From positions 62,001 to 126,000 of the IMG/VR virus record IMGVR_UViG_3300031857_000010: a stretch of DNA of 64,000 bases. One strand, 5' to 3'. Below the pieces are notes generated by a model. The model made no database searches and was not told where the DNA came from. It saw only the letters and a program-made list of their open reading frames with translations. The stretch's first letter is position 1; each line of letters starts with the position of its first letter. A program made the position numbers and the translations under genes. This document shows, one piece after another, positions 1,818 to 21,400 of the stretch.

Positions 1818-1842
1818 AAACCCCCTAATTGGGGGTTTTTTT
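1818..1842. terminator. Bidirectional intrinsic terminator
   Basis: AAACCCCC-TAATT-GGGGGTTT hairpin flanked by A and T tracts between convergent genes. Confidence 0.85.
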
Positions 1843-2677
1843 ATTGTAGGTTATACTTCTTTCTGTGTTCTACCATTAAATCAACTATTATTTTACGAGT
1901 TTGGGTTGTGAACTCACCCTTGGTCATAATCCAATCATAATAAGATTTATCTTTTTCAAGAACTAATGTTACTGATTGACCTTGATATTTGCCAAATCCA
2001 AATACAGGAATATTGTCAGTATTTAATTTAATTGTTCCAGCAAAATCTACACTATCAAAATCTTTTGTAAAATCAGATAAAGCTTGAACATCGTTAATAA
2101 CTGGTTCACTAATGACACTATCATCCTTTTCAACACAATCAATTCCAGAATAATGATCTAACATTGATTCTAATACCTCTACGGTGGCTTTTACGTCATT
2201 TAAAGCATCGTGGGCACCTTCTAGGTTCTTTTTACAATAAAATTGATATGCAGCCTTTAAATCACGTCTTTCCATTCTGTGGTAAATTCTTTTTACATCT
2301 ACACACCTTCTATCAGACATATCCAATTCAAAACCTGCCCTAGCAAATTCCTCCATTAACATAGGAATATCAAATCTATTGCCGTTAAAGGTGCAAAAAT
2401 CAGAATCTCCTATTAGATCAAACAAGGATTTAGCAATTCTATCGAATGTGGGTTGGTCTTTGACCATATCGTCAGTAATGTGATGGACATCACTGGCTTG
2501 TTTTGGAATCGGAATTTCGGGATTCACTAATCTAGATTTGACTAATTTTTCCCTGCCATCAGCAAAAATTTTGATTATTGCCAACTGAACAATTCTGTCG
2601 TTTTTAACACTTAATCCCGTAGATTCAATGTCAAAACAAATAAGGTCTTTTTCTAAATTTAATTTCATATTTGCCAT
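1841..2677 (-). CDS. DEDDh 3'-5' exonuclease (DnaQ/Pol III epsilon-like, Bacteroidota type)
   Basis: CFDIESTG, FNGNRFDIPML and HDALND motifs; C-terminal FGFGKYQG domain. Confidence 0.9.
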   Translation of the reverse strand: MANMKLNLEKDLICFDIESTGLSVKNDRIVQLAIIKIFADGREKLVKSRLVNPEIPIPKQASDVHHITDDMVKDQPTFDRIAKSLFDLIGDSDFCTFNGNRFDIPMLMEEFARAGFELDMSDRRCVDVKRIYHRMERRDLKAAYQFYCKKNLEGAHDALNDVKATVEVLESMLDHYSGIDCVEKDDSVISEPVINDVQALSDFTKDFDSVDFAGTIKLNTDNIPVFGFGKYQGQSVTLVLEKDKSYYDWIMTKGEFTTQTRKIIVDLMVEHRKKYNLQ

Positions 2678-2688
2678 TTTTATCCAAG

Positions 2689-2696
2689 CAAATATA
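2689..2696 (-). promoter_or_regulatory. Bacteroidota-type -7 promoter element (TAnnTTTG)
   Basis: TATATTTG on the minus strand, 11 nt upstream of the exonuclease start; no clear -33 element seen. Confidence 0.4.
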
Positions 2697-2707
2697 ATAA
2701 AAAAAAA

Positions 2708-3109
2708 TTAAATCTCAGTTATATCAAATTCATCAAGAAGACAACTTTCTCCATCCTCTCCGAAATTTCCAGTATTTTTGTCGGTAATCCAACCTCTGAA
2801 AAAAGCATAATATCCAGTTTTAATATTTCCGTCAGGATACGATTCTAAATAAGCCTCTGTACCTTGATCAAACCATTCGTTTGGTTTTGTAATAAATCTA
2901 TAGTTTTGTCTGTAGATCTTATAAGGATAATTATCGTCTAGTTTGAAGTAATCTATAAATCTATCCTCAAAAATATTGAACCATTTATTGTTAATAATAA
3001 TAAAATGTTCATAAGAACCCTTTCCATCATACCATAAATAAATGATATCATTATTTTTTAGTTCTTCAATTTTTATCTCTTGCCAAAAAGGTTTATTGAA
3101 TTCAATCAT
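2708..3109 (-). CDS. Hypothetical protein
   Basis: 133-aa ORF overlapping the topA stop by 4 nt. Confidence 0.65.
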   Translation of the reverse strand: MIEFNKPFWQEIKIEELKNNDIIYLWYDGKGSYEHFIIINNKWFNIFEDRFIDYFKLDDNYPYKIYRQNYRFITKPNEWFDQGTEAYLESYPDGNIKTGYYAFFRGWITDKNTGNFGEDGESCLLDEFDITEI

Positions 3110-5436
3110 TTTTTCTTAGCGTATTTTTTTGATTTTGATGAACTTTTACCCTCTCCGATTATTTCTTCACAATCTTTTTTAGTGATAGTTTCTATATCAT
3201 AAATAGCCGGAATCTTATAATTTTTATTTTTAAATTTAATGTATGGTCCATATTGACCATTCAATACTTTTATATCACCAAATTCTTTTGTAGATCCCGA
3301 TTTTTCATTACTTGAATTTTCCTTTATTAATTCTGAAGCTTCCTTTAGATTTATTTTTTCAGGATCATATTCTGTATTTGACAATCCAATAAACTTACCA
3401 TCATATTTTACATACGGTCCAAATTTACCAATCGCTACTTGAACAGGTTTTGATTTATATTCTCCTAGGTTTCTAGGCCATTTTAAAAGTTCCAATGCTT
3501 CTTCAAGAGTTATACTACCAACTTCTTTGTCTTTTGGTATAGATGCATATTTTAAATCTTCATCTCCTTTTTCTCCAAGTTGTACCATAGGTCCAAATCT
3601 TCCAAATCGAGAATAAACATTTTTCTTTGTAGATTTATCAACACCAATTAATCTTTCATTTGATGTTCCGATTTCACCAAGAGCAGATTTAACCTTTTTA
3701 TCAAAAGGAGAATAAAAATCTTTAAGCATTATTTTCCATTCTTTATTACCATCTGAAATTTCATCTAGTTGATTTTCTATTCCAGCAGTAAATTTATAAT
3801 CCATAATATCTGGAAAATTATCTGTTAGATAATCACAAACTACAATTCCAATTTCAGTAGGAATCATTTTAGCTTTTTCTGCACCAAATTTTTCATCTAA
3901 TTCATTAGTGGATAATTTATCATTTTTTAGACTGATATTTTTTACTTTTCTTGATTTAGCAGGCAGGTCTTTTTTCTCAACATATTCTCTTTTTTGAATA
4001 GTTGATAAAATTGATGCATATGTAGAAGGTCTTCCTATTCCAAGTTCTTCTAATTTTTTTACTAATGAAGCTTCATTGTATCTAGCTGCTGGTTTAGTAT
4101 AAATTTCTAACCCATCAATTTGTTCATAATCAAGAATTTGACCTTTCTCCATCTTCGGTAAAGTTCCATTTTCATCTTGATCATCTTGATTTTCTTCTTC
4201 TTCAGCATCTTCATTACTATATACCTTTAAAAAACCGTCAAATGTTATTACTTCGCCTTTTGCAACAAATAAATCTTTTTTACCACCTTTGGAACTTTCA
4301 ATTTCAATAGTGGTTTTATCCAATAAAGCATCTGACATCTGAGAAGCCACTGCTCTCCTCCAAATTAAACCATAAAGTTTCATTTCATCTTGTCCAGAAA
4401 CTACTTCTTCATGTTCAAAATGAGTTGGCCTTATTGCTTCGTGGGCCTCTTGAGCACTGGCGTTTTTATTCTTAAATTTTTTAGGATTAGAAAATTTATT
4501 ACCATACTTTTCAACTATAAATTGAGTTGCTGCCTGAACAGATTCCTCTGATAAATTTACACTGTCTGTACGATGATAAGATATATGACCTTGCTCATAA
4601 AGATTTTGAGCAGTTCTCATTGTTCTGTCTACACTAAATCCAAATTTTTTTGATGCTTCTTGTTGTAAACTTGAAGTTGTAAATGGTGCTGGAGAACTTC
4701 TTTTTCCGGGTTTAGTTTCAATCGAGCTTACACTGAATTCTGAACCAACTAATTTATTTAAGAATTTTTCAGTCTCTTCAAAATTTTTGAATCTTTTATT
4801 TAGTACAGCTTTTATTTTCTGTTTTTTACCACCTTTGTCAATTGAAAAAATTGCTACAACTTTATAATCAGAAGTAGAATCAAATGATTTATGTTCTTTT
4901 TCTCTTTCTACAAGAATTCTTAATGCAACACTTTGAACCCTTCCTGCAGATAAACCTAATTTTATTTTTTTCCAAAGCAATGGCGATAAATCAAACCCCA
5001 CTAAACGGTCCAACACCCTCCTTGCTTGTTGAGCATTGACCATATTCATATTAAGTGTTGTAGGATTATTTATAGCTTCATTAATAGCTTTTTCGGTGAT
5101 CTCTTTAAAAATAATTCTTTTGGTTTTTTTTACGTTTAAGCCAAGAACCTCTGCAACATGCCAAGAAATTGCTTCTCCTTCTAAATCGTAGTCACCTGCT
5201 AAAATAACTTCATCACATTTTTTTGCTAAATCTTTTAATTCTTTAACAACATCTTTTTTGTCAGTAGAAACCACATATGAAGGTTCAAAATCATTTTTTT
5301 TATCAATTCCTTCTTTACCTTTTTTTAATTCTCTAATGTGACCTATACTAGCTTTGACTATATAATCTTTTCCAAGATAAGATTGAATTTTCTTGATCTT
5401 ACCCGGACTTTCACATATTACTAATTTTTTTCCCAT
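3106..5436 (-). CDS. topA: DNA topoisomerase I (type IA)
   Basis: LVICESPGK Toprim, DYDLEGE, SAGRVQS, catalytic ISYHRTDS, GIGRPSTYA, and C-terminal GRFGP/GKFGPY repeats. Confidence 0.97.
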   Translation of the reverse strand: MGKKLVICESPGKIKKIQSYLGKDYIVKASIGHIRELKKGKEGIDKKNDFEPSYVVSTDKKDVVKELKDLAKKCDEVILAGDYDLEGEAISWHVAEVLGLNVKKTKRIIFKEITEKAINEAINNPTTLNMNMVNAQQARRVLDRLVGFDLSPLLWKKIKLGLSAGRVQSVALRILVEREKEHKSFDSTSDYKVVAIFSIDKGGKKQKIKAVLNKRFKNFEETEKFLNKLVGSEFSVSSIETKPGKRSSPAPFTTSSLQQEASKKFGFSVDRTMRTAQNLYEQGHISYHRTDSVNLSEESVQAATQFIVEKYGNKFSNPKKFKNKNASAQEAHEAIRPTHFEHEEVVSGQDEMKLYGLIWRRAVASQMSDALLDKTTIEIESSKGGKKDLFVAKGEVITFDGFLKVYSNEDAEEEENQDDQDENGTLPKMEKGQILDYEQIDGLEIYTKPAARYNEASLVKKLEELGIGRPSTYASILSTIQKREYVEKKDLPAKSRKVKNISLKNDKLSTNELDEKFGAEKAKMIPTEIGIVVCDYLTDNFPDIMDYKFTAGIENQLDEISDGNKEWKIMLKDFYSPFDKKVKSALGEIGTSNERLIGVDKSTKKNVYSRFGRFGPMVQLGEKGDEDLKYASIPKDKEVGSITLEEALELLKWPRNLGEYKSKPVQVAIGKFGPYVKYDGKFIGLSNTEYDPEKINLKEASELIKENSSNEKSGSTKEFGDIKVLNGQYGPYIKFKNKNYKIPAIYDIETITKKDCEEIIGEGKSSSKSKKYAKKK

Positions 5437-5804: not shown

Positions 5805-6668
5805 CTATATGTGTTGACGTAAAACTTTGCTATTCTTGTTACATTTTAATACTCTGATAGTCATATCTTTAATTTGACGAACTCTTTCTCTTGTTAAATC
5901 CAAATAGTCACCTATTTCTTCTAGAGTCATAGTTTGGTAACCCAAAATTCCATAATACATACAAACTATAACTCTTTGACGGGGTTGGAGACTTTTCAAA
6001 ATTTTCTCTAAATCATCGCAAAAAGATTCATTAATTAATTTTTCATCCGGTGATGTTATTTCTTTGTTGATCAAACAATCACTTAAAACCATATCCTCAC
6101 TGTCAGAAACAGGACTATCCAAAGAAGCAACCTTTCCAGTGTTACTTAGCATAGTATCTTTAATTTTAATTTCTGTTTCTTCAAGGACTTGAGCAATTTC
6201 CTGTTCAGTGGGTTCTCTTTCAAGTTTTATTTCTAATTGCTGTGCAGTTCTATTAATTTTATTTATTGCCAAATTTTGATTATTTGGTAGACGAATTAAT
6301 TTGCCGTTATCAGAAATTGATTGCATGATTGATTGACGAATCCACCAAACTGCGTAAGAAATAAATTTAAATCCTCTAGAATTGTCAAATCTCTCGGCTG
6401 CTTTAATTAAACCCAAATTTCCATCAGAAATCAAATCTTCCAAGCTCATACCTTGGTTTTGAAATTGCTTAGCTACAGAAACAACAAAACGGAGATTAGC
6501 TTTCACAATTTCATTTAGTGCAGCTTTATCTCCGTTTGCTATTCTCTCTAATAAATTATATTCTTCTTCTTCTGTTAGTAGTTTGATTTTTGATACTTCT
6601 GAGAAATAATAATCTAATGATTGACTCTCTCTCTTTGTGATTGATTTAGTGATTTTTAGTTGTCTCAT
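5805..6668 (-). CDS. RNA polymerase sigma-70 family factor (short Bacteroidota RpoD-like), copy 1
   Basis: MRQLKITKSIT N-terminus, ANLRFVVSVAK, GNLGLIKAAERFD, FKFISYAVWWIRQSI, TLEEIG..LDLTRERVRQI. Confidence 0.95.
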   Translation of the reverse strand: MRQLKITKSITKRESQSLDYYFSEVSKIKLLTEEEEYNLLERIANGDKAALNEIVKANLRFVVSVAKQFQNQGMSLEDLISDGNLGLIKAAERFDNSRGFKFISYAVWWIRQSIMQSISDNGKLIRLPNNQNLAINKINRTAQQLEIKLEREPTEQEIAQVLEETEIKIKDTMLSNTGKVASLDSPVSDSEDMVLSDCLINKEITSPDEKLINESFCDDLEKILKSLQPRQRVIVCMYYGILGYQTMTLEEIGDYLDLTRERVRQIKDMTIRVLKCNKNSKVLRQHI

Positions 6669-6773: not shown

Positions 6774-7631
6774 TTAAAAACGAAGTTCTGAACCCAAATT
6801 TCTTTTCATGAAACCTCTCAATTTTCTGATTGCTTTATCTTTAATTTGCCTGATCCTTTCCGAAGAAAATTCAAGTTTGTGTGCAATTTCAGTGTTTGTT
6901 AATTCCAGATTTTTATCATTTAATCCATAACTGAGTTTTATTACCTCCTTTTCCATTTCTGAAAGACAAGAAAAAGCTAATTCAATCTGTTTTTTTCTAT
7001 AATTACCTGCAACGTAATCTTCAATATTCAAAACATCTTGATTGAGTACATCTAATAAAGTGGTTTCGCAATCAGGTGTTAATTTTGTATCTAAAGAAGA
7101 AGTCTTGTTTCCGACGTATAAAATATCGAATGTTTTATGATCAATATTTAATTCTTTACAAACTTCATCTATAGAGAAATAACCATTATTCTCTAATTTC
7201 TTTTTATTTATTAAATCTTTTAAATGATTTTGTTGTTGGATTTTATTTTGAGGTAATCTAACTAATTGTCCATGTTTAGCAATTGCTTCTAGTATTGATT
7301 GTCTTACCCAAGCTACAGCATAAGAAATAAATTTGAAACCTCTAGTTTCATCAAATCTTTGAGCTGCTTTTATTAAACCAACATTTCCTTCTGCTATCAG
7401 TTCCTCTAATGACAAACCACGATTCTGATATTTTTTTGCACATGAAATAACAAATCTTAAATTGGCTTTTACCAATTCATTTTCTGCGTTTTTATCTCCG
7501 GTTCTAATTTTTTGAGCTAATTCAACTTCCTTTTGTTGATCAATCATCGGAATTAAAGAAACATCATTGAAATATTTATCAATTATAAAAGTTCTATCCG
7601 TGATGGTTGCTGTAATCTTTAGGCTTCTCAT
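6774..7631 (-). CDS. RNA polymerase sigma-70 family factor, copy 2
   Basis: ANLRFVISCAKKY, GLIKAAQRFDETRGFKFISYAVAWVRQSI, SERIRQIKDKAIRKLR. Confidence 0.95.
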   Translation of the reverse strand: MRSLKITATITDRTFIIDKYFNDVSLIPMIDQQKEVELAQKIRTGDKNAENELVKANLRFVISCAKKYQNRGLSLEELIAEGNVGLIKAAQRFDETRGFKFISYAVAWVRQSILEAIAKHGQLVRLPQNKIQQQNHLKDLINKKKLENNGYFSIDEVCKELNIDHKTFDILYVGNKTSSLDTKLTPDCETTLLDVLNQDVLNIEDYVAGNYRKKQIELAFSCLSEMEKEVIKLSYGLNDKNLELTNTEIAHKLEFSSERIRQIKDKAIRKLRGFMKRNLGSELRF

Positions 7632-8888: not shown

Positions 8889-9113
8889 TTAATATTCAGA
8901 ATCAAATTCTTGACCTTGATGCATAATCCCAATACTTACTTTGTGAGCTAATTCTTTTAATCTAATTAGTTTTTTTCTTGCCCTTCTTCCAGCTTTTCTG
9001 TTTCTAGTAGGTCCAATAAATTTATATAAATCTTGTTCAGTTTGTTGAATTAAGAATTTTAATTTTTGAAAATTCTCATCAATATTATTATTATCGTTAA
9101 ATTGTGGTATCAT
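8889..9113 (-). CDS. Histone H1-like (Hc1 family) small basic protein
   Basis: NRKAGRRARKKL..LKEL..KVS resembles the Hc1-family GNKAAG.RARK motif. Confidence 0.6.
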   Translation of the reverse strand: MIPQFNDNNNIDENFQKLKFLIQQTEQDLYKFIGPTRNRKAGRRARKKLIRLKELAHKVSIGIMHQGQEFDSEY

Positions 9114-9118
9114 ATAAT

Positions 9119-12100
9119 TTATTCAGAATCACTATTCTCATCCTTGATCTTATTCAAATATGAGTCTATGCTTTTCATCATTTTTCTTGTTTGGATATCA
9201 AATTTTCTATTTTCAACAATTAATTTATTTTCAGTTAAAGGGGCACCAGCTTCAGCTTCTGCTCCGCCTGCTGCTGGTTCAGTTCCACCTGCTTCCGGTG
9301 CTGCTTCAGCTCCTCCTAATTCAGGGGTTGCTTCTGGTGTTGCTTCTGCACCACCTCCAAGACCACCTAATACGCTAGAACCTCCAAAACCTCCACTGGA
9401 CTCTTCTCCCCCTGATGATTCAGATCCACCTTCAGGTGTTGAACCACCATCACCAGCATCAAAATCTGGTTTTCTAAATTTTTCATCCAAATCTTTGAAT
9501 ATACCAGTATCCATATATTCATCATTTGCTCTCTCAATCTCAGAAAACATTTTCTTTTCAACTTTCTTTTGTCTAAGAATTTGTTTGATCTCTGACTTTG
9601 AAAAACCTAGAATATATTCCATTGCCCAAGAATAAGAAACAGGAGCAGTGGCATCACTTGAGAATAATTCTTTGAAAACTTCCATTCTTGCTTTCCAAGT
9701 TTCGAGTTTTAATAACTCTAGCTGTGTTGATGGATTTGTCAAAGTCAAAGTAAAATTATCTAAGTCATCTTCAAATCCTAAAAAGTATAAATGTACATTA
9801 GCTATTCTTCTTAATTCAAGAACTATCTGTTCTTGAATTCTGTTTATAGTTCTAGCAAATCTCAAATCAACTTGAGAAAGAGTTGAACCTCCCGGCATAG
9901 ATTCAGCATAGTTCAAATATGTTTTTGGAACTTTGATTGCAGCAAATAATTTGTTTTGTAAATATTCTATATCGGCTATGGCATCTAAATTAGAATTTTG
10001 TGTAAAAATGCCTACGGTTAAAGCAAAATTGTGAAAATTATGATATTGTTCAGGGCCATCAATTGTGATAGTTCCTGTATCTTGTTTATCGGATAAAAAT
10101 TCCACTGAAACAATTTTATGGTTGTAGCAATAAGCACTATTTTTGAATTCTCTCCAATTTTTGTATCCAAAATGTTTTACTAATTTATCTAAATTATTAT
10201 GTGTGATTCCTTTGCTTTTTAAAAATTGTTTATTATTTGAATTTAACTCATTAAAAATTTTATAAAATTCATTGTTTGAATCATTTATAATTGGTAAAAT
10301 ATCCTGAGTTTTATTAAAACCATTTTTTATCAAATCAGATAAAATAGAGATCATTCTTTCATCATATTTAATCCTTTGTGGACCAATAACACTTTCTACA
10401 TAATCTTTATTTTCCCATAATTTTTTTGAGTTTTGACTGTATCGAATTTTATTTTCTAACTTGTTTTTAGTTATTTTTGCTTTATTAGAAGTTCTTTTAA
10501 TTATTTCATCTTTTTTTGGATTACTTTTAAAAGTAGAAGCTGATTTTTTTCTTGATTTTAAACTGTTATCTATCGCTGTCTTTATTTTTTTATCAAGCTC
10601 TTCAGGGCTAAGGTTTTCAAAATATTTTACAAGTCCCTTTTTTCTTTCTTTTTTCCATGATTCAGTTATTTCATTTCCAAAAAATTTATACATTTCATCA
10701 ATTTTATCTTGGTGATAATAAAAATGATCTTTCGGATTCATAAAACATAAATTTTCGGGTGAATTGTTATATCTATTGAAGTCTTTGTGATGAATTGTGT
10801 TTTTTTCACTATCAAAATATTCATTTAGATATGAAAATATTTCATGTTCATTTAAATTTTTAAAATAATTAGCTACTAATCTATGTGTATATATCCATTC
10901 ATTTGAATTATGATCAAACACCATTTCATAAGTGTTTCTTTTTCTTTTTTTACCAGCTCCTTTAATTTTTTGAAATTTTTTATTGAATGACCACATAGAT
11001 TCACCTATTTGCAAATCCTTTGCTTGTTTAATTCCATTAAATTTAGTTGGAAATTTGTGATCAGGTGTTGTGGTAATTGTTTCACCATTATCTAATGTTA
11101 TTTTTACTACATCAGTATTTTTTCTAGTTAATCCAGCCCAAGTTATTTTTCCGGGAACTATTTCTCCTGTTTCTGGATTAATTGAATATGACCAAAGTTG
11201 TTTTCCATTTTCAAATTCAGAAATTATATCTTTTAGTTCTAGGCTTCTTCCATCTAATAATTCAATTTTTGTATCTAAAGCAAGACATGCTCCGGGTAAA
11301 GTTTCAATTTTAGAACTCTTATCCCCTCTTATTGGCAAGAAATAATCCTCTTCGTAAGTTATTGGATTGTATTTTAAATTTACTTGACCACTATTCGGAT
11401 CAACAACAGGAGATTTTTTAACATTCTTTTTTACCTGCTCAATTAATTGATAAACATCATTTGGATCTGTGTTCCCAACTTCAATATAAAATATTCTCCT
11501 CTCAGGTGCTCTGGATAAACGATAAACCAACATAGCGTCTTCTGCTAACTGTAATTGTTTCCAAAGTTTTCTTGCAGGATCTAACAAACTTCTACCATAA
11601 GGCAATCTTGAAGCATCAAATAATAAACAAAAGTGAGCAACTTGCCATTCCTCAAAAAACATATTGTTAATATCCCATTTGTATCTTGTCGATTTTGGAT
11701 TTCCATCATAACCAACTTCTTTATGAATTTCACCAACTGGTAAAATCATACAATCGTATATTCCTTGATCCTGATCAATTTCTAATTTCAAGAAACAATC
11801 TCCGTATTTACATAATTCTCTTGTCCAAAAACTTAAATTAAATTCAGCATTTAATGTATTATAAAATAATTCTTGTAAAATTTTCTTTATTCTTAAATTA
11901 TCAGAATATATTGTTATTACATGACCCCTTTCACTTCTAGTGCAAACTTCATCTGAGATTATATCTAAAGCAGCAGCGATTTCAGGAGACAAATCCATGG
12001 ACCTAAAATCGTTATATGCTGTAATTCTGTCTGAATCATAAAACAACGTTCTTGAATATAAATCTTGAGCAATTTTAACAGATTGTATGTCAAGATATTG

Positions 12101-12262
12101 TTGTTGTTTTTGCTGAATAAAATTAATATCAGAGGATTGTGTCGGAGGAGTACTGGATAATATATCCTTACTTTGTTCCAAAGACTTCATCGGGTCTTTT
12201 CGACCTCTTAAAGCCCTCATAACACCATAAAATACACTTTTTGGGTCTAATTCGTTTGCCAT
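9119..12262 (-). CDS. Portal protein (T4 gp20-like), intein-containing
   Basis: QLAEDAMLVYRLSRAPERRIFYIEVGN, EEDYFLP.RG, IETLPGA|SNL..IADIEYLQNKLFAAIKVP, and DLRFARTINRIQ. Confidence 0.93.
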   Translation of the reverse strand: MANELDPKSVFYGVMRALRGRKDPMKSLEQSKDILSSTPPTQSSDINFIQQKQQQYLDIQSVKIAQDLYSRTLFYDSDRITAYNDFRSMDLSPEIAAALDIISDEVCTRSERGHVITIYSDNLRIKKILQELFYNTLNAEFNLSFWTRELCKYGDCFLKLEIDQDQGIYDCMILPVGEIHKEVGYDGNPKSTRYKWDINNMFFEEWQVAHFCLLFDASRLPYGRSLLDPARKLWKQLQLAEDAMLVYRLSRAPERRIFYIEVGNTDPNDVYQLIEQVKKNVKKSPVVDPNSGQVNLKYNPITYEEDYFLPIRGDKSSKIETLPGACLALDTKIELLDGRSLELKDIISEFENGKQLWSYSINPETGEIVPGKITWAGLTRKNTDVVKITLDNGETITTTPDHKFPTKFNGIKQAKDLQIGESMWSFNKKFQKIKGAGKKRKRNTYEMVFDHNSNEWIYTHRLVANYFKNLNEHEIFSYLNEYFDSEKNTIHHKDFNRYNNSPENLCFMNPKDHFYYHQDKIDEMYKFFGNEITESWKKERKKGLVKYFENLSPEELDKKIKTAIDNSLKSRKKSASTFKSNPKKDEIIKRTSNKAKITKNKLENKIRYSQNSKKLWENKDYVESVIGPQRIKYDERMISILSDLIKNGFNKTQDILPIINDSNNEFYKIFNELNSNNKQFLKSKGITHNNLDKLVKHFGYKNWREFKNSAYCYNHKIVSVEFLSDKQDTGTITIDGPEQYHNFHNFALTVGIFTQNSNLDAIADIEYLQNKLFAAIKVPKTYLNYAESMPGGSTLSQVDLRFARTINRIQEQIVLELRRIANVHLYFLGFEDDLDNFTLTLTNPSTQLELLKLETWKARMEVFKELFSSDATAPVSYSWAMEYILGFSKSEIKQILRQKKVEKKMFSEIERANDEYMDTGIFKDLDEKFRKPDFDAGDGGSTPEGGSESSGGEESSGGFGGSSVLGGLGGGAEATPEATPELGGAEAAPEAGGTEPAAGGAEAEAGAPLTENKLIVENRKFDIQTRKMMKSIDSYLNKIKDENSDSE
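9995..11287 (-). mobile_element. Intein (431 aa) in portal, with HNH-type endonuclease
   Basis: Starts CLALDTKIELLDG; block B ITTTPDH; HNH segment THRLVA..IHHKDFNRYNNSPENL; ends HNFALTVGIFTQN followed by +1 Ser. Confidence 0.92.
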
Positions 12263-12321: not shown

Positions 12322-15063
12322 TTATCCAGACATCAACCAGCTCAAATCATTATCATCGTCTGATTTTCTGTTTTGACTCGTCAAAATAATACCCTCTGTT
12401 GGTTTGGAATCAAAATCTATTTTATCTCCGATTTCAGTTTTTTGGTTCGAAATCGCACCAATCATAGCTTTGTATAAATCTCTACTGGCAAAATGTTTGA
12501 AATATTCAGTATCTCTTACAAAAAGTAATACTCCCAAAGCAAAAATTAAATCATCATTAAATCCATCAGCATGTTCTGGTTTATTGCCATTATATATAAA
12601 AGTATCAAATTCCTCCAGTAATCTCACTGAATTTATCTTAATCTTTCCTTCTCTCATATAAGAATTTAAACTGCTTATAATTAAAGGTCTTGTTACCTGA
12701 GTTGTTTGAATACCGGGAATATCATCATTCTCTTTGATTTTAACTTTTGCTACCGGATTTATAATGTCTTTTATTGATTTTGAATGATAAATTCTGTCTT
12801 CTGGATATTTAAGACTATTTTTTATATTCAAAGTTGTTGCTAAACCAAAACTATTACATTCGATTACCAAATAAGCATTATTATAATCACGTCCAACTTT
12901 ATCAATTAAGCTTCCAAATACATCTGGTGGAATTTTACCTTGATACTCTGCTACTTGTTCACATGTATCAGCGTCAAAAACTTGTAATGTTGAAAAGTCT
13001 TTTGAATCGCCTCTTGCAACGTCTCCGCCCACAATGTAGTTTTTTCCATATTCTGGTTTTTTCCAAACCCAAAAATTTGTTTTTGTATTGATAAATCTTT
13101 CTTCAGACCTTGTATAATCATAATAAAATTCTGGTTTTTCGTTTATAATAGATCTTTTGTATTTTTCAATAATAGCACTTTCAATAACCAATTGTCTTGA
13201 ACCCTCAAATGACAAATCTAACTCTTGTGCGATTTTTACCCTATCATACTGTAATCGTTCACATTCTTTTTCATACCATGGACTTGTCCAATATTTTTGA
13301 CCATAATCATTAATTTTTTCCTCCATTTCTTTACAATAAACAGGATGTTGAGTCCAATGTATTTCAAATGGTATAAAATCATTTTCACTCTTTTTTGTTC
13401 CAACCCAAGTTCTATGATATAGGTTCCCCGTGCCTTGTGGAGTGCTTATCATGATACATTTACCTTGTGTTGCAGATAAAGCAAGACCAGCAGCCATCCA
13501 AATATCTTCTGCATTCTCTATAAACGCAGTCTCATCCAATATCAACATTGTTAATGATTCTCCACGACCTGCATTTTTGGAACTTGCAACTGCTTTTACC
13601 CATGATATTTTACCTTCTGGATTTTTCAATGAAAAGAATTTTTCATTGTCTTTTTCAGATTGTGTATCTGGATCAAATAAAAATTTAGGAAGAAATTGAA
13701 AATATTGTTTAACGGTACTTAAAAAACGAATTGCTCCAGCACCATCGTTTGCAACAATTAATATTCTTTGGTCCATTTTGAACAATAACATCCAAACTAC
13801 AAAGCCTGCTGTGATTACAGAAAGTCCTGTATTGTGAACTAAAAGACCATCAATAAAGTAGTTTTCATTTTTAGTTACTGAAATGTCATAACAATTAATT
13901 TTTCCAACTCTCTCTATTTTTCTAACTTTTGATTGATCTTTTACATCATGTTTTCTTGAATTTGAAATTGAAACGTGTTCTGAATTTATTTTTTTATAAA
14001 TTCCTATATCATTAATAAATTTTGATATGCTTTTGGAGTGAGTTATTCTTAATTTAAAAAAAGGATTTTTTTGAAGTTTCATATTTTTAACTTCATAAAT
14101 ATTACATTTAATATCAAATTTTTTTAATAAAAATTTTACTTGTTCTAAAAATTCCTTGCTTGGGGAAGCTATTCCTATTTCTAATCTTTTATTTGTTTTT
14201 TTCTTTAAAATACTTATCCAACCATCTCCTGCAAACATTCTATTTAATAAAATAGATAATGAATTCTTATTCCAATAAAAAACTTCTTGAGGTAATATTT
14301 TATTTTCTGTTTTCTTTCCAGCTATTTTTTTATTTTCACACCATTCCATGATTGGACTTTTGGTATTAACCCCATGCTTTTGATGAGGTAAATAATCGAA
14401 TCCTTTTAGTTTTGGTATTTTTCTTAAACTTAATTCTGGAAAAATATAATTTATTGATTCTTCAAATTCTTTTAGATAATCAATATTGTTGTTTGTAAAT
14501 TTTACTTGTTTGATTGTACTTCCATCCGTTATGAGATAAGCTAACAATTTTATTTCATTTATATCAGCTTCAATTTCCCCAAATTGAAATTTTTGATCTA
14601 AAATTTCATCGTCAATTTCTAAATCTTTTGCTGATACCCATTTGTTTTTATTTTTTATGAAAAAAGGGTGATTTTCACCAACAACAATATTTCTTGAATC
14701 TTTTAATTTTATTTTTACAGATTCTATTTCTCCGCATTCCCAATGATCATAAACCGTATCTAATTCATATTTATTTTTATTTAAATTGAATGAATATACT
14801 ATATCTCCTTTGTTTATTTCACTTATTTTTTTTGGCCCATCTGGTGTACTTATAAAAGTATCTTCTGGTAAACATTGTCTTGATTTTAGAATAATATTAT
14901 TCTGATATTTTATGTAATTTTTCAATACATTCTCTTGATACTCAAAACAAGATAATTTATCTACTTTGCTTTTTCTAATATCATAAACATATCCATAGTT
15001 ATTTAGAAAATAAACTGGATCTTTTGCACATTTAATATATTCTTGTATCTCTTGAGGTGTCAT
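12322..15063 (-). CDS. terL: Terminase large subunit, intein-containing
   Basis: KSRQ|TGLS Walker A region, LILDETAFI Walker B, ISTPQG, nuclease GGDVARGDSKDFS and DGFNDDLIFA; adjacent to the portal. Confidence 0.95.
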   Translation of the reverse strand: MTPQEIQEYIKCAKDPVYFLNNYGYVYDIRKSKVDKLSCFEYQENVLKNYIKYQNNIILKSRQCLPEDTFISTPDGPKKISEINKGDIVYSFNLNKNKYELDTVYDHWECGEIESVKIKLKDSRNIVVGENHPFFIKNKNKWVSAKDLEIDDEILDQKFQFGEIEADINEIKLLAYLITDGSTIKQVKFTNNNIDYLKEFEESINYIFPELSLRKIPKLKGFDYLPHQKHGVNTKSPIMEWCENKKIAGKKTENKILPQEVFYWNKNSLSILLNRMFAGDGWISILKKKTNKRLEIGIASPSKEFLEQVKFLLKKFDIKCNIYEVKNMKLQKNPFFKLRITHSKSISKFINDIGIYKKINSEHVSISNSRKHDVKDQSKVRKIERVGKINCYDISVTKNENYFIDGLLVHNTGLSVITAGFVVWMLLFKMDQRILIVANDGAGAIRFLSTVKQYFQFLPKFLFDPDTQSEKDNEKFFSLKNPEGKISWVKAVASSKNAGRGESLTMLILDETAFIENAEDIWMAAGLALSATQGKCIMISTPQGTGNLYHRTWVGTKKSENDFIPFEIHWTQHPVYCKEMEEKINDYGQKYWTSPWYEKECERLQYDRVKIAQELDLSFEGSRQLVIESAIIEKYKRSIINEKPEFYYDYTRSEERFINTKTNFWVWKKPEYGKNYIVGGDVARGDSKDFSTLQVFDADTCEQVAEYQGKIPPDVFGSLIDKVGRDYNNAYLVIECNSFGLATTLNIKNSLKYPEDRIYHSKSIKDIINPVAKVKIKENDDIPGIQTTQVTRPLIISSLNSYMREGKIKINSVRLLEEFDTFIYNGNKPEHADGFNDDLIFALGVLLFVRDTEYFKHFASRDLYKAMIGAISNQKTEIGDKIDFDSKPTEGIILTSQNRKSDDDNDLSWLMSG
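13831..14874 (-). mobile_element. Intein (348 aa) in TerL with LAGLIDADG endonuclease
   Basis: CLPEDTFISTPDG start; LLAYLITDGS and LLNRMFAGDGWI motifs; ends CYDISV..NENYFIDGLLVHN followed by +1 Thr. Confidence 0.95.
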
Positions 15064-15456: not shown

Positions 15457-18400
15457 TTAAGCAGGTTCATAGCTAATTGTATAAGAAAATTCTAAAGTAT
15501 TTCCCAAGGTATTATCTACTTGAAATCCCACATAAAGAAATGTTTCACATGCTAATAAATCTACCGGAGCATTTGCACTTACTGAAAAACATGCATGTCC
15601 ACTTGTTGAATTAAAACCTACGGGTGTTGCTTCATTGTCTGCTATTGCTTTTGTTGATCTTGCATCTATAGCAAAGTCGGAACATAATAGGTAAGACAAT
15701 TGAACTGTCAAATTTCTCGATACACCTACAGCTCCTCTTGAATAAGCCATTCCACAAACTTTAATTTTATAAGAGGTCCCAATATCTCTTGGTAAAGGAA
15801 CACCACAATTGAAATCTGAATTATCAGTTAAAGTTGCTGGGGCATTAATTCCTGCTTGTAAATCCCAAGGAACAGCATTCCAGCCTCCATCTATTGAATT
15901 ACCTACATAATATCTATTTGCATTAGGGTTGTTTATATAGCCAGAGTTTGCAGCTATTAATCCCTTATCTGTACCACTTGTACCAGAAGTTCCACTTGAT
16001 CCAGAGCTACCAGAAGAACCAGATGTACCACGACTCCCTGAACTACCAGAGGAACCTGATGTACCTGCTGCACCGGAACTACCAGAAGAGCCTGATGTAC
16101 CGCCACCACCTCCACTTGTTGAAGAATAAACATATCCATTAGCATCTATGGTAAGGAATTTTGTTCCACCGTTTGGTGTGTTCCTTATTCTAAGATAATC
16201 TACATATGTATGATTGTTATCATTTCCAGTTGATGATGAAGAAGGATTTGATAATGAAAGACCAGTGCTTCCTAAAATTACTGCGTTTGTTACATTTGAA
16301 TTTATAATATTTGCAGAACCTCCAACTATTGATGAATTAGTTGAACCTGCACTAACAGTATTTCCTGAACCATTTAGAATTGCTGATCTAATTGCATTTG
16401 TAATATTTTCTTGACCATTAACGACCGCTGAATATTGTCCTAGAGTTGTGTTTGAAAGACCATTTCCAATAAAACTTCCTATTCCAGTAGCTTTATTACT
16501 TATACCATTTATGGTTGATGAATATGTATTTATTGCTGTGTTTCCAGAACCATTTCCTATAAAACTACCAATTCCACTTGCTGTATTATTTTTACCGTTT
16601 ATTATAGTTGCATAAGTATTAAAGCCTGCTGTATTTCCAGACCCTTGAGCTATGAAAGTTTTTATTCCATTAGCTAAATTATATTCTCCATTTATAACTG
16701 TAGAATAAAAAGTTGTTGCTGAGTTTTTGAAACCATTTAAGATAGAGCCCCATTTTCTAACAACTTTATTTTGAACGCCATTAACAATTACATTATAGCC
16801 TTGATTTCCTTGATTTGCAAAAATACCAGCATAATTTTCAACTCCAGTACCTATAAATACATGTTTTGTAATAGCTGTATTTGCAACTCCGTTCACAATG
16901 GTTGTATAACCGGTTTTTGGCATATTGCCGTTACCGCCTCTCGATTCAATATAATTATCCTTACCATTTAGTATTGTACTGAATTTTGTTTTGTTTGTAT
17001 TTCCAGTACCATTCAAAATGGTTGCAAATTCAGGTTGGTAAATTGAGAATGGAAAACTATAACCAGCACCTCTTGTTGGTATTATTCTATTCAAAAATCC
17101 TTGGCCTATTAATGCAAATATATTTGTGGTATTCTGCCCACTTATATAATTACTTATACCACCAATTATAGAACTTTGTGTAGTCAATCGATGTGTGGTA
17201 TTTCCAGAACCATTTATAATTGTTGAATAACTAGAGAAAATTTCATTATCTTGTCCATTTCCAATTAAAGATGTTGCACCTGAAATTAAATTGCTTCTAC
17301 CATTACCAATAAAAGATTGACTTCCATAAACTGTATTTCCTGATCCATTGAAAATGCCAGAATAAGTTGAATTGAATGCATTGTTTTTGATAACTCTGTT
17401 AATTTTTCCATTTATTACGGATGAATAATTAGAGTAGACATCATTTGTAAAACCATTTAAAATTGCTGAAGTTGATCCCGATATTAAATTAGATGTACCA
17501 TTTCCAATAAATGATAAATCTCCAAAAACAGTATTTCCTGAACCATTGAAAATGCCAGAATAAGTAGAATTAAATGCGTTATTTTTGATAACTCTGTTAA
17601 TTTTACCATTTACAATTGCTGAATAATTTGAGTAAATATCATTTGTTAATCCATTTAGAATTGCTGAAGTTGATCCGGATATTAAATTAGATTTACCGTT
17701 TCCAATAATAGAAGTGCTTCCATAAACTGTATTTGCGGATCCACTAAAAATTGCAGAATAAGTAGAGTCTATTACACCTCTATCTTTACCTACTAAATTA
17801 ACTCTGCCGTTTATAATTGTAGTGAATTGAGTTCTTGCTGTGTTTATATATCCATTTAATACTTGAGAGAACTTAGTGTCATACCGTGTACCAGATGGTG
17901 TAGGACTAGAAAATCCTACCCTGTTTAACCAACCAGCTAAAACTGTATTAAATCCTAAGCTATTTGTTAATCTAGCATGATAAATAGTATTTTGTTTACC
18001 ACCACCAATTAAATTATATCCACCATTATTTAAAGTTATTAAATTATTAATTCCATTTAATATTGTACTGTGTCTATAATCAGCTATTTGATTGTTTCTG
18101 CCACCCAATATAGTATGACCCAAACTATACACATTTGGAGGTAATCCTGATCTTGTTCCAACGGTGTTTCCAGATCCACCAATAATTGAATTTTCAGATG
18201 AAAAACCAGCATTATTTGGTCTGATGAAATTATCATATCCATTTAAAATTGTTGATACTGATGGGCCTGCACTTATGAAATTTCCACGACCATTACCTAT
18301 TAAATGATATTTTCTACCATAATGTACTGTGTTTCCAGAACCGTTTATTACAGTAGAGAAACGCGAATTAGCTGTATTAAATCTTCCGCTTCCAATTAAA

Positions 18401-21400
18401 CTATAATATTTAGATGCTCTGTTGTGTTTTCCATTTATAATAGTATTAAAATCATAGGCTGATACTCCGTATGCTATATTGTGTTGACCATTTAAAATTA
18501 AACTATATGAAGTACTTGCTGTATTTCCAGAACCATTTACTATTGATGAAAAATTACCATTTATTATAAAGTTATTTCTACCATTATCGATAGTTGAATA
18601 ATCAGTTTTAATTGTGTTGCCAGTTCCATTAAAAATACTTGACTTCGATTTGCTATTTCCAATATAATTATATTCGCCATTAATTATAGTAGTATAGAAA
18701 CCATTTACGGCTGTATTAAATTTACCAGTTCCAAAGAAATTAAATCTACCAAAATTTGAAAAATTATTTTGTCCATTTCCTATAAACGAAAATCCAAAAT
18801 TTACATTAGATGTAAATGCCGTATTATTTTGTCCGTTTGTTATAACATTGAAAGCTCCTTTTGTTGTATTTCCAGAACCATTAAGTATTGTACTAAATGA
18901 AGAATTATTATCATAAGAATTTACATAGTTGTAAGCCCCATTACCTATAAAAGAATAAGCAAAATTTGTTAAATCTTTTGTGGAATTGTTTTTTCCATTT
19001 ACTATTGTTGAAAAACCTCCTTTGGCAGTATTTCCACTTCCATTTCCAATGAATTGATATCCTCTGGTCAGATAGGAACTTGCAAATGTTGAATTTTTAT
19101 ATCCTCCACCAATAATAAAAAATTTAGTTTTTCCTGAATTGTATTTACCGTTTACAATTGTGGCATATTGTGTAATCGCAGTATTTGAATTACCATTTAA
19201 AATTGATGTATAAGAATTATCTACGTAATTGTTATATCCATTTCCTATAAAAGAATGTTTTCCAGATGCTTTATTATCTCTTCCATTAACAATGGTTGGA
19301 AATAAAAATTGCGTAGCAGTATTTCCTGAGCCATTTATTATTGAAGAATATTTAGAATTAGCGTTGTTATATATTCCTTGATTAATTATAGAAAGTTCTC
19401 CATCTGCTACATTGTATTGTCCATTGATAATTGAAGCTCTGAATCCATCAGCAAGATTTGCTCTACCATTAATTATTATTGATGTAACTGTTTTTGCAGA
19501 ATTCTCAATTCCGTTTCCTATGAAAGATCTTAAACCGCTTGCTGTGTTTCCAGATCCATTAATTATCGTTGACCAATTACTAGATCCTGTATTTTTTATA
19601 CCTGAACCTATAAATGAATATTTCGAACCACTTTCAATTAAATTCTGATATCCACCTATGATAGTAGAATATTGTGATAATCCAGAGTTTGATTTTCCTG
19701 CTACAAGTGCAAAATTAGAAGAAGCTTGATTGTCTCCTTTTTGTAATTGTACAGCCATGGTTGCAGCAGCATATGTGCTAGTGCTTGTTCTTCCGCTTTC
19801 CCACAATGTGTGTCTAATACCAAAAGTATCATTAAGTGTAAGTCCTGTTACAATTTCTATTGCAGTTCCAGCTGAGATGTTAGGTGCTGTTTGACCAGTA
19901 ACATTTATTGTAATATAATTATTGTTAAGTGATCTTATTACTTGAACATTGGTACCGGCAGAAATTGTTCTTAAATATACTACCCCTAAGTTTTGATTAC
20001 TGTAAATATTTCCATCAGGAGATCCGGCATTACCTAGATTGTTAAAAGTCAGTCCGTATCCACCGGGTATTGTTATACCTGTTTTAAATACATATCCATT
20101 ATTGTCAATGGTTAAAAATTGAAAAGGTGTAGGTGGACCTTGGTATATATTTGTAATTCTTAAATATGGTACTGCAGTTGTATCTGCTGTTAATGCAATA
20201 GAAATGTTTTTGCCTCCGGTGATAGTAGATCCTGATTTAAATATACTATTGTTTAAACCATTTATTATTGTAGAATAATAAGTATTTCCAGTTGGAATGT
20301 AATTATTCTTACCATTAATAATTGAATTATATCTTGTTTCTAGATTTTTATCATTTGAATAAATTCTGTTGTTTGATCCATTAAAAATTGAATTGAAATA
20401 ACTATTTTTATTACAATTCAAAACTAAAGAACAATTAATACTTGATCCACTTATTAAATTATATACACCATTTTGTATTATTGAATAGAAACTTCCATAT
20501 ATTTTATTTTTATGACCGTTGCCAATTAAAGAATTTACACCTATATTTAAATTATTTGTTCCATTTAATATTGTTGTGAAACTACTAGTTGCAGTATTTT
20601 GAATACCATTTAAAATTGTTGAATTTACATTTGTTGTTAAAAGAAAATTTATACTAGGTGGATATACTAACTCATCTAAAGTTGGAGAAAAACTAAATAT
20701 TTGATTATACAAACCATTTAATATGGATGAATATCTTAATGTTTTATCATGATAAACTTTATCACCAATTTGATTGTAAATACCACTTCCTATTAATGAT
20801 TGCTTAGATTTTACAAAATTATATCTACCGTTTATAACGTTTGAATAACTTGAATAACCAGAATTAAATTTACCTGCTAAAATATTAGAGTGTTCTGGCA
20901 AACCAATACCACTGTATAGATATACTCTGCTTAATTTATTTTTATATCCATTAATTATATCAGCATAGTTAAATATACCTATATAATTCTGATTACCATT
21001 TTTTATTGAAGAATAATAAATTACATAACCTCTATTTTGTTTTCCGTTATCTATGGATGAATAATTAGAATACTTTACATAATTTTCTTTACCATTTAAA
21101 ATTGAAAAGAAATTTGTAGTAAGGGCAGAATTACTAGAACCATTTTTAATTGAGCTTTTTGAAGAATTTTTTATATAATTATCTGTACCCTGAATAATGG
21201 TATTAAAATAACCATCATCAATTGTATTGCCGCTACCATTAATTATTGTACCATAATCACTAGACGCACTTAAAGAATTATAAGCTCCATTTAATATTGA
21301 ACCAAATCTGGTGTTATTTTTTCCATATAAACCATTTCCTATAAAAGAATATGGTTTTGTTGAAATATTATTATAACCATTTGTTATAATTGAAAATCTT

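What the first reader, a model, noticed from the sequence alone, without database searches (positions are those of the whole stretch)
9995..11287. Intein in the portal protein, carrying an HNH endonuclease and a non-canonical Gln-Asn C-terminus
A 431-aa intein sits in the conserved TLPG(A)-x-NL motif of a T4-type portal. Inteins usually occupy nucleotide-handling enzymes, so a structural portal host is unusual. The internal nuclease is HNH-type (HHKDFNRYNNSPENL) instead of the usual LAGLIDADG. The penultimate residue is Gln rather than His (TQN|S). Head assembly would depend on splicing.
Basis: partly seen in the sequence, partly recalled or inferred. Interest (0 to 1): 0.6.

Follow-up and report, generated by a model that had tools for sequence, protein, structure and literature searches.

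The report
HNH intein in phage portal gene
The portal (DNA-entry) protein gene of a large freshwater phage is interrupted by a real, probably still mobile, self-splicing intein carrying an HNH nuclease; such inteins are common among this phage's relatives, so it is a good example of a known kind, not a new one.

Summary
Window 9995..11287 (- strand) encodes a 431-aa in-frame insert in a 1047-aa T4-gp20-type portal, with junctions TLPGA|CLALD...FTQN|SNLDA.

It is a class-1 intein:
- The Pfam portal profile is cut cleanly (positions 3-277 and 279-431).
- Cys1, block B TxxH, Asn431 and Ser+1 are invariant in relatives.
- The AlphaFold model has a Hint fold (Z 21.8 to the NrdJ-1 intein).

An HNH motif is invariant, and its weak best structural match is I-HmuI.

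An otherwise identical intein-less allele exists (3,475 flanking nt identical; only the +1 Ser codon differs). Both alleles occur in one lake metagenome.

Among the 120 nearest portals ranked on the N-extein alone, 20 carry this intein, 15 carry inteins only at other sites, and 82 have none. Intein and extein similarities are decoupled. dN/dS is about 0.09.

The site maps to the DNA-contacting channel loop (T4 gp20 A353|D354).

Portal inteins, HNH inteins and phage inteins without a penultimate His are all published. None of the site-sharing relatives checked has His there.

Splicing and cleavage were not tested.

Verdict: new member of a known kind, modest interest.

The parts
9119..12262 (-). 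Portal precursor gene (1047 aa plus stop), T4 gp20 type
   Evidence: ORF list. Pfam Portal_T4 6.4e-61 in two pieces. PHROG 213 portal protein. Sequence match to T4 gp20 structures 3ja7 and 6uzc at about 1e-22, obtained with the natural intein-less allele P0012.
11288..12262 (-). N-extein (portal residues 1-325), ending ...ETLPGA
   Evidence: Portal_T4 profile positions 3-277. 975/975 nt identical to the intein-less contig L034.
9995..11287 (-). Intein, 431 aa, class 1 (Cys1 ... Gln430-Asn431)
   Evidence: Coordinates checked. AlphaFold2 model pLDDT 86.2, pTM 0.70. All 31 structural matches with Z>=8 are Hint domains; the best is the NrdJ-1 intein 8ubs_A, Z 21.8, rmsd 1.4 A over 139 residues. 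Foldseek's best-ranked PDB hits are likewise Hint-domain structures, almost all inteins.
10967..11287 (-). Hint N-lobe (intein residues 1-107). Holds block A Cys1 (11285..11287) and block B T74-P-D-H77 (11057..11068).
   Evidence: C1, T74 and H77 are identical in 92/92 inteins at this site. The profile matches the NrdJ-1 intein at 1.2e-9. DSSP shows beta strands through residue 107.
10679..10942 (-). HNH nuclease module (intein residues about 116-203). The motif H166-H167...N175...N179...H188...H192 lies at 10712..10792.
   Evidence: Pfam HNH_3 20-21 bits, below the 24.8 cutoff. PHROG HNH 5.6e-8. Two strands (164-167 and 180-183) followed by a helix (185-203) in the model, as in a beta-beta-alpha-metal motif. 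Best structural match of the separately folded insert is I-HmuI 1u3e_M: Z 5.3, rmsd 2.8 A over 69 residues, 26% identity. That is weak. H167, N179 and H192 are intact in 74/74 full-length relatives. dN/dS 0.07.
10127..10675 (-). All-helical region (intein residues 205-387). Function not shown; inferred to be the DNA-recognition part of the endonuclease.
   Evidence: Helices only in both models, with pLDDT mostly 75-95 when folded alone. No significant fold or sequence match. dN/dS 0.14, so it is constrained. It is lost together with the HNH in the mini-intein relatives.
9995..10123 (-). Hint C-lobe (intein residues 389-431): block F ...TGTITIDG...HNFHNF..., block G ...GIFTQN. Gln430-Asn431 lies at 9995..10000.
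   Evidence: Of 88 aligned inteins at this site: T406 in 87, D410 in 87, H419 in 88, N431 in 88. Residue 430 is K, Q, Y, R, S, N, F, L or V, never H.
9992..9994 (-). +1 Ser codon (TCT), first residue of the C-extein and the second splicing nucleophile
   Evidence: Ser in every intein-bearing relative. It is the only codon that differs from the isogenic empty allele, which has AGC, also Ser.
9122..9994 (-). C-extein (portal residues 757-1047), with a Gly/Ala/Glu/Pro-rich low-complexity tail
   Evidence: Portal_T4 profile positions 279-431. GC rises to 0.41-0.46 over 9100..9550.

Best explanation
This is a full-length class-1 intein that carries its own homing endonuclease. It is inserted in the portal gene of a freshwater tailed phage of at least 217 kb.

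The insertion point corresponds to T4 gp20 A353|D354. That lies inside the conserved channel loop that lines the narrowest part of the DNA channel.

Inferred mechanism:
1. The 1047-aa precursor is translated.
2. The Hint domain (residues 1-107 and 389-431) splices itself out: an N-S acyl shift at Cys1, transfer of the N-extein to Ser+1, cyclisation of Asn431, then an O-N shift.
3. This gives a 616-aa portal with the junction ...TLPGA-SNLDA..., which can then form the dodecamer.
4. Asn cyclisation proceeds without the usual penultimate His. The invariant block-F residues His419 and His416 are the likely substitutes.
5. The released intein, or the precursor, acts through its I-HmuI-like HNH module and a helical DNA-binding region. 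It nicks or cuts intein-less portal alleles of co-infecting relatives, and recombinational repair then copies the intein in (homing).

Shown here: the insertion, the fold, conservation of the catalytic residues, purifying selection, presence/absence polymorphism in an isogenic background, and a patchy, extein-discordant distribution.

Inferred only: that splicing occurs, that the nuclease is active, and what it cuts.
For: Clean insertion:
- The Portal_T4 profile is cut between positions 277 and 279.

Splicing residues and fold:
- C1, T74 and H77 are identical in 92/92 inteins at this site. H419 and N431 are identical in 88/88 aligned, and T406 and D410 in 87/88.
- Ser+1 is present in all of them.
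- The Hint fold matches at Z 21.8, rmsd 1.4 A over 139 residues (Foldseek).

Empty alleles:
- IMG/VR contig L034 is identical over 2,500 nt upstream plus 975 nt of N-extein. In the next 123 nt it differs only in the +1 codon, AGC instead of TCT.
- In lake-metagenome run X12, contigs bridge both intein junctions (depth 5.8-6.8). A separate contig joins 9991 to 11288 with GCT between, which is the AGC allele on the - strand (depth 3.9).
- Intein-free portals of 614-618 aa are 95-99% identical to the N-extein.

Sporadic distribution:
- Of the 120 nearest portal clusters ranked by N-extein alone, 20 have this intein, 15 have inteins only at other sites, and 82 have none.

Horizontal movement:
- Extein and intein identities are weakly coupled (Spearman 0.25).
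- The window's intein is 60% identical to inteins in portals only 39-41% identical to its own, but 43% identical to the intein in a portal that is 72% identical.

Functional constraint:
- dN/dS against the P0001 lineage is 0.09 for the whole intein, 0.07 for the HNH and 0.14 for the helical part, at dS of about 1.
- The HNH triad is intact in 74/74 full-length relatives. About ten mini-inteins at the same site have lost the nuclease, which is the expected decay stage.

Site:
- It maps to the gp20 channel loop, residues 350-359. T349 is the T of TLPGA (PMC4493910).

The phage is thriving:
- 20 runs from 15 studies hold the stretch, 11 of them flagged as possible sources of this DNA.
Against: - No direct evidence of splicing, such as protein data. 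No RNA run holds the stretch.
- The penultimate His is absent. By my manual alignment the usual block-F Asp (F:4) is an invariant Thr406, so the chemistry of the last steps is not the textbook one.
- Pfam HNH_3 is below its cutoff on this copy. The structural match to I-HmuI is weak (Z 5.3, inside the tool's stated noise range). Foldseek finds nothing significant for the insert.
- The empty-allele joint in X12 rests on one contig with only 30 letters on its shorter side.
- dS of about 1 is close to saturation, so the dN/dS values are rough.
- Equal dS in intein and exteins shows long vertical co-inheritance with the P0001 lineage. Recent homing in this particular lineage is therefore not proven.
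Confidence: 0.85

Rival explanations
1. The splicing domain works, but the HNH nuclease is no longer an active homing enzyme. The intein would then be a vertically inherited passenger that persists only because imprecise loss would destroy an essential gene.
For: dS is the same in intein and exteins against the P0001 lineage, which means long co-inheritance. Pfam HNH_3 is below its cutoff on this copy. Mini-inteins at the same site show that the nuclease can be lost.
Against: - HNH dN/dS is 0.07. H167, N179 and H192 are intact in 74/74 full-length relatives spanning 39-88% identity. A dead nuclease should decay.
- Intein and extein similarity are discordant.
- An isogenic empty allele coexists in the same lake sample.
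Confidence: 0.2
2. The insert is a permanent, non-splicing domain of the mature portal: a Hint-like decoration kept in the virion.
For: There are no protein data, the penultimate His is missing, and the block-F Asp is apparently missing.
Against: - Otherwise identical phages make the portal without the insert, and most close relatives lack it.
- The site is the loop that forms a channel constriction of about 28 A (PMC4493910). Twelve 49-kDa inserts could not fit there. This is inference.
- Every residue needed only for splicing (C1, TxxH, terminal Asn, Ser+1) is invariant.
Confidence: 0.03
3. The intein is splicing-dead and the gene is a pseudogene in a defective or assembly-chimeric contig.
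For: The window comes from a metagenome-assembled record estimated to be 83% complete.
Against: - The frame is open over 1047 codons.
- Four IMG/VR contigs encode a portal 100% identical in protein to the window's, and 20 runs from 15 studies hold the stretch.
- Contigs from independent runs bridge both junctions without differences.
- Purifying selection acts on the whole intein.
Confidence: 0.02

Closest known systems
Portal-protein inteins of mycobacteriophages and actinobacteriophages (Kelley et al. 2016, PMC5050341; bioRxiv 10.1101/2025.01.02.630785) and of prophage SPP1-gp6-like portals (Novikova et al. 2015, PMC4760082)
   Same: A class-1 intein interrupts the phage portal gene. Distribution is sporadic. 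Phage inteins often lack the penultimate His. The neighbouring terminase gene is often invaded as well.
   Different: Those portals belong to other families (InterPro IPR009279; COG2369 SPP1 gp6-like), not T4 gp20 (PF07230). Most of their endonucleases are LAGLIDADG. I found no published description of the channel-loop site after TLPGA in the library I could search.
In-frame HNH inteins (Dalgaard et al. 1997, as cited; actinophage examples in the 2025 preprint)
   Same: An HNH nuclease is nested in frame between the two lobes of the Hint domain.
   Different: The host genes differ. Here the HNH is followed by a helical region of about 185 aa with no recognisable family.
Third intein of the portal of uncultured huge phage LR756508.1 (locus L001)
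   Same: It is the closest relative among deposited phage genomes: 29% identity over the full 431 aa, 1e-36. It has the same Hint-HNH-helical layout, sits in a gp20-type portal, and has a non-His penultimate residue (Lys).
   Different: It sits about 40 residues further downstream (...ELEGK|C...LKN|STLSQ). That portal also carries two mini-inteins upstream.
I-HmuI (PDB 1u3e), an intron-encoded HNH homing endonuclease
   Same: It is the best structural match of the nuclease module: Z 5.3, rmsd 2.8 A over 69 residues, 26% identity, covering the catalytic core of I-HmuI.
   Different: The match is weak. I-HmuI is free-standing and intron-encoded, and from my own knowledge it is a nickase from Bacillus phage SPO1. 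The DNA-binding parts do not match.
NrdJ-1 intein (PDB 8ubs) and other mini-inteins
   Same: The splicing domain superposes at Z 21.8, rmsd 1.4 A over 139 residues, 27% identity. The profile match is 1.2e-9.
   Different: NrdJ-1 is a split or mini intein with no endonuclease and sits in a ribonucleotide reductase.
Phage inteins with a non-His penultimate residue, for example the Bethlehem gp51 RDF intein, which has a penultimate Gly (PMC5050341)
   Same: Class-1 inteins without His at the penultimate position can splice. An upstream block-F His is proposed to take over its role.
   Different: Here the residue is Gln and varies freely across the family. By manual alignment the block-F Asp is also replaced, by Thr.

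Membership tests
Intein (class 1, Hint superfamily) | In-frame insertion in a conserved host protein that is absent from orthologues | tested here: met
   The Portal_T4 profile is cut between positions 277 and 279. Intein-less alleles match 95-99% in protein and 100% in flanking DNA.
Intein (class 1, Hint superfamily) | Nucleophile (Cys/Ser/Thr) as first residue, and block B Thr-x-x-His | tested here: met
   Cys1 and T74-P-D-H77 are identical in 92/92 inteins at this site.
Intein (class 1, Hint superfamily) | C-terminal Asn followed by Ser/Thr/Cys at +1 | tested here: met
   Asn431 is present in 88/88 aligned sequences. Ser+1 is present in all.
Intein (class 1, Hint superfamily) | Penultimate His in block G (typical, not obligatory) | tested here: not met
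   It is Gln430 here. Across relatives it is K, Q, Y, R, S, N, F, L or V, never His. Exceptions that still splice are published (PMC5050341), so this does not exclude membership.
Intein (class 1, Hint superfamily) | Block F Asp (F:4) and block F His | tested here: inconclusive
   His419 is invariant. By manual alignment with the neighbouring TerL intein and the textbook consensus, F:4 is the invariant Thr406, and an invariant Asp410 lies four residues later. No residue-level structural superposition was available to settle the register.
Intein (class 1, Hint superfamily) | Hint fold | tested here: met
   AlphaFold2 pLDDT 86.2. 31 matches with Z>=8, all Hint domains, best Z 21.8. The best-ranked Foldseek hits are Hint-domain structures.
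Intein (class 1, Hint superfamily) | Protein splicing actually occurs | not testable with these tools
   This needs a reporter assay or mass spectrometry.
Class 3 intein | No N-terminal nucleophile, and Cys at block F position 4 (WCT motif) | tested here: not met
   Cys1 is present and the block-F position is Thr. Class-3-like inteins do occur at other sites of relatives' portals.
HNH homing endonuclease (beta-beta-alpha-metal; Pfam HNH_3; I-HmuI-like) | HNH motif residues | tested here: met
   H166, H167, N175, N179, H188 and H192 are invariant in the alignments. The triad is intact in 74/74 full-length relatives.
HNH homing endonuclease (beta-beta-alpha-metal; Pfam HNH_3; I-HmuI-like) | Family profile match above the curated cutoff | tested here: not met
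   HNH_3 scores 20-21 bits against a cutoff of 24.8 on the window copy. It passes in the relatives P0253 (35.4 bits) and P0211 (28.3 bits). PHROG HNH scores 5.6e-8.
HNH homing endonuclease (beta-beta-alpha-metal; Pfam HNH_3; I-HmuI-like) | Beta-beta-alpha-metal fold | tested here: inconclusive
   The model has two strands and a helix carrying the motif. The top structural match is I-HmuI, but only at Z 5.3. Foldseek finds nothing significant.
HNH homing endonuclease (beta-beta-alpha-metal; Pfam HNH_3; I-HmuI-like) | Site-specific cleavage of the empty allele, and homing | not testable with these tools
   The evidence is indirect only: an isogenic empty allele, a patchy distribution, and intein/extein discordance.
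T4 gp20-type portal protein (PF07230) | Profile match over both exteins, and homology to solved gp20 | tested here: met
   6.4e-61. Matches to 3ja7 and 6uzc at about 1e-22.

The most novel reading that the evidence does not exclude
The gp20-type portal of this freshwater/huge-phage clade may be an exceptional intein hotspot. It has at least nine insertion sites, up to four or five inserts in one gene, and both class-1 and class-3-like inteins.

Its channel-loop intein family has no penultimate His in any member seen and an invariant Thr where block F usually has Asp. It may therefore use a distinct Asn-cyclisation chemistry. That chemistry could be slow or conditional, so that splicing times portal dodecamer formation and hence head assembly.

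A related possibility is that the AGC-for-TCT swap of the +1 Ser codon in the isogenic empty allele is a homing-immunity allele selected in the wild.
Probability: 0.12. Interest if true: 0.6.

Novelty: new member of a known kind. Interest (0 to 1): 0.3.

Why it matters
For annotation, the portal should be described as a 616-aa mature protein plus an intein. The neighbouring terminase gene has an intein of its own. Gene callers and family searches otherwise report an oversized hypothetical protein.

For intein biology, it offers three things:
- a large natural series: hundreds of sequence clusters at one site, from full-length to mini, all without a penultimate His;
- an isogenic pair of alleles, with and without the intein, coexisting in a lake, which suits measuring homing and loss in nature;
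- a compact HNH-type intein endonuclease, of which few have been characterised.

It also shows that the most conserved DNA-contacting loop of a virion protein is a preferred intein target. This extends the rule that inteins sit in conserved, nucleic-acid-binding sites rather than breaking it.

Tried and rejected
- blastn of the portal gene against deposited phages gave only 71-nt matches to cyanophage portals, so no close cultured relative was found.
- The search for related loci with the single intein protein found only 7 loci. An alignment query was needed to reach more.
- The 80 loci were found partly through an intein-derived peptide pattern, and the full-length query includes the intein. 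Their intein frequencies are therefore biased. I replaced them with a search scored on the N-extein alone.
- Foldseek against the PDB, and a PDB profile search with the insert alone, gave nothing significant. The helical region stays unassigned.
- Raw-read run X21 laid no reads, so it is no test. No RNA run holds the stretch.
- A search of the window's own genome with the intein profile found no second copy.
- Class 3 intein, bacterial intein-like domain, a permanent structural domain and a pseudogene were all considered and rejected (see membership test and rivals).
- The +1 codon family (TCN versus AGY) does not separate intein-bearing from empty alleles across the clade. It is therefore not a general marker.
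- I did not build or search a joined extein model. The exteins were searched separately by reference, and the natural intein-less alleles P0012 and L034 served as the spliced comparator.
Full report
**1. Observation**

The - strand ORF at window 9119..12262 encodes 1047 aa. Residues 326-756, which are window 9995..11287 and 431 aa, begin with Cys after ...ETLPGA and end with Gln-Asn before Ser-Asn-Leu.

Pfam Portal_T4 matches the N-extein at profile positions 3-277 and the C-extein at 279-431. The portal family profile is therefore interrupted at one point by the whole insert. The insert matches Intein_splicing at the family cutoff, weakly matches HNH_3, and matches a PHROG HNH family at 5.6e-8.

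The window lies in an IMG/VR virus record of 216,699 bases, estimated to be 83% complete. Twenty runs from 15 studies hold the stretch, and 11 of them are flagged as possible sources of this DNA. Their labels are lake water, freshwater, or (for nine runs) 'fungus metagenome'.

**2. Anatomy**

In an alignment of 25 inteins from the same site (39-60% identical to the window's), the invariant residues are:
- C1;
- T74-P-D-H77 (block B);
- H166, H167, N175, N179, H188 and H192 (HNH);
- T404, G405, T406, T408, D410, G411 and H419 (block F);
- N431.

The same pattern holds over 92 inteins.

AlphaFold2 on that alignment gives pLDDT 86.2 and pTM 0.70. Residues 1-107 and 389-431 form a Hint domain. VIA-align gives Z 21.8 and rmsd 1.4 A over 139 residues to the NrdJ-1 intein, and all 31 matches with Z>=8 are Hint domains. 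Foldseek agrees.

Two parts lie between the lobes. The first is a small beta-rich module whose two strands and helix (164-167, 180-183, 185-203) carry the HNH residues. The second is an all-helical region of about 185 aa.

Folded alone (pLDDT 89.6), the insert's best PDB match is the HNH homing endonuclease I-HmuI, at Z 5.3, rmsd 2.8 A over 69 residues and 26% identity. That is suggestive but within the tool's noise range. Foldseek and a profile search find nothing significant. The helical part therefore has no assigned family. I infer DNA recognition from its position and from its loss together with the HNH in mini-inteins.

**3. Is it removable?**

- IMG/VR contig L034 carries the same phage segment without the insert. 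The 2,500 nt upstream are 2,500/2,500 identical, and they include part of the terminase intein. The N-extein is 975/975 identical. In the next 123 nt only the +1 Ser codon differs: AGC against TCT.
- In one freshwater run (X12), contigs bridge both intein junctions at depth 5.8-6.8. Another contig joins 9991 directly to 11288 with GCT between, which is the AGC allele on the - strand, at depth 3.9. This rests on a single contig with 30 letters on its shorter side, but it reproduces L034 exactly.
- Protein clusters of 614-618 aa are 95-99% identical to the N-extein and lack the insert. One of them lies on a contig where the terminase is intein-free as well.

**4. Distribution and mobility**

I ranked portals on the N-extein alone so that the intein would not bias the list. 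Of the 120 nearest clusters, 20 have an intein at this site, 15 have inteins only at other sites, 82 have none and 3 are undetermined.

A phmmer scan with the intein alone over 1.84 billion cluster representatives gives 3,451 hits at E<=1e-3 and 491 at E<=1e-30. Of the best 150, 142 match the portal exteins. Seven of the other eight match Pfam Portal_T4, and the last is a short fragment.

Extein and intein identities are only weakly coupled (Spearman 0.25). The window's intein is 60% identical to inteins in portals that are 39-41% identical to its own. It is only 43% identical to the intein of a portal that is 72% identical.

About ten relatives carry mini-inteins of 149-212 aa at the same site. 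These have lost the nuclease and helical parts but keep the splicing residues.

Against the P0001 lineage, dN/dS is 0.09 for the whole intein, 0.07 for the HNH, 0.14 for the helical region and 0.02-0.03 for the exteins, with dS of about 1 throughout. The nuclease is therefore under purifying selection. In this lineage the intein has also been inherited together with its host gene for a long time.

Taken together this is the expected picture of a homing cycle: invasion, persistence, nuclease decay and loss, with empty alleles still present in the population.

**5. Where in the portal**

The natural intein-less allele P0012 aligns to T4 gp20 (3ja7, 6uzc). TLPGA lies on gp20 T349-A353 and the next residue on D354.

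The T4 structure paper defines residues 350-359 as the channel loop between the clip domain and stem helix alpha-7. That loop is one of three DNA contacts, forms a constriction of about 28 A, and is exceptionally well conserved. The SPP1 equivalent of T349 affects packaging when mutated (PMC4493910).

From this I infer that an unspliced 49-kDa insert here is incompatible with a functional dodecamer, so the phage depends on splicing. It also means the host site is a conserved nucleic-acid-contacting motif, which is the usual kind of intein site.

**6. Comparison with what is known**

- Portal inteins are published for prophage SPP1-gp6-like portals (PMC4760082) and for mycobacteriophage and actinobacteriophage portals (PMC5050341; bioRxiv 10.1101/2025.01.02.630785).
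- In-frame HNH inteins are also known; the same sources cite Dalgaard et al. 1997.
- Poor conservation of the penultimate His in phage class-1 inteins is described, along with evidence that such inteins splice and that a block-F His may compensate (PMC5050341).
- I found no paper describing inteins in T4 gp20-type portals or at this loop. That search covers open-access text only.
- The closest deposited phage sequence is the third of three inteins in the portal of huge phage LR756508.1. It is 29% identical and sits about 40 residues further downstream.

My conclusion is that this is a new allele family of a known kind.

**7. What is a little unusual**

(a) The penultimate residue is never His in any member seen. 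By manual alignment the block-F Asp is an invariant Thr, so the last splicing steps may differ from the textbook scheme.

(b) The isogenic empty allele differs only by a three-base swap between the two Ser codon families, exactly at the insertion point. Across the clade both codon families occur with and without the intein, so I cannot tell whether this reflects co-conversion or a cleavage-resistant allele.

(c) The portal gene of this clade has at least nine intein sites and up to four or five inserts in one gene. Some of these inteins look like class 3.

**8. Limits**

Splicing, nuclease activity and target were not tested and cannot be tested here.

I built and searched no joined extein model. 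The exteins were handled separately by reference, and natural empty alleles served as the spliced form.

Noticed in passing
window 13831..14874 (-), inside the terminase large subunit gene 12322..15063: A second intein of 348 aa in the neighbouring TerL gene, with junctions ...LKSRQ|CLPED...LLVHN|TGLSV. It is LAGLIDADG-type (Pfam LAGLIDADG_3 5.9e-13, Intein_splicing 5e-13) and has the canonical His-Asn end. A relative (L099) has an intein-free TerL of 565 aa with the same junction, LKSRQ-TG.
   Followed up: partly
window 9992..9994 (-) versus L034:3476-3478: The +1 Ser codon is TCT in the intein-bearing allele and AGC in the otherwise identical empty allele, so all three bases differ. The same AGC form is seen as a joint in run X12. 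This is unexplained. It could be co-conversion during homing or a nuclease-resistant empty allele.
   Followed up: partly
relatives' portals, e.g. P0076, P0082, P0114 (site near P0012 residue 301) and P0072, P0100 (site near residue 150): Inteins at other portal sites start with Pro instead of Cys and have Cys in block F (DVYCMTV). This looks like class 3 inteins. At least nine insertion sites exist in this portal clade, with up to four or five inserts in one gene (P0046).
   Followed up: partly
L001 (LR756508.1 144500-151500), portal ORF 1264..5424: The portal of a 484-kb uncultured phage carries three inteins: two mini-inteins and one HNH type. The ORF upstream of it ends with a LAGLIDADG intein.
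   Followed up: partly
window 8889..9113 (-): The 74-aa gene directly downstream of the portal matches the histone H1-like protein Hc1 (PF07432, 2.4e-7, above the cutoff). It is conserved in the same position in relatives (L094-L099).
   Followed up: partly
window 5805..6668 (-) and 6774..7631 (-): Two adjacent full-length sigma-70 family genes (regions 1.2, 2, 3 and 4) lie in the structural gene neighbourhood. They are also present in relative L099.
   Followed up: no
window about 9150..9560: The portal's C-terminal tail is Gly/Ala/Glu/Pro-rich low-complexity sequence. GC is 0.41-0.46 here, in a genome of about 0.25-0.30 GC. The 189-aa antisense ORF 9066..9635 is probably a by-product of this composition.
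   Followed up: no
window 15457..22485 (-): A 2342-aa ORF lies next to the terminase gene. Its only Pfam hit is a weak collagen-repeat match, and its function is unknown.
   Followed up: no
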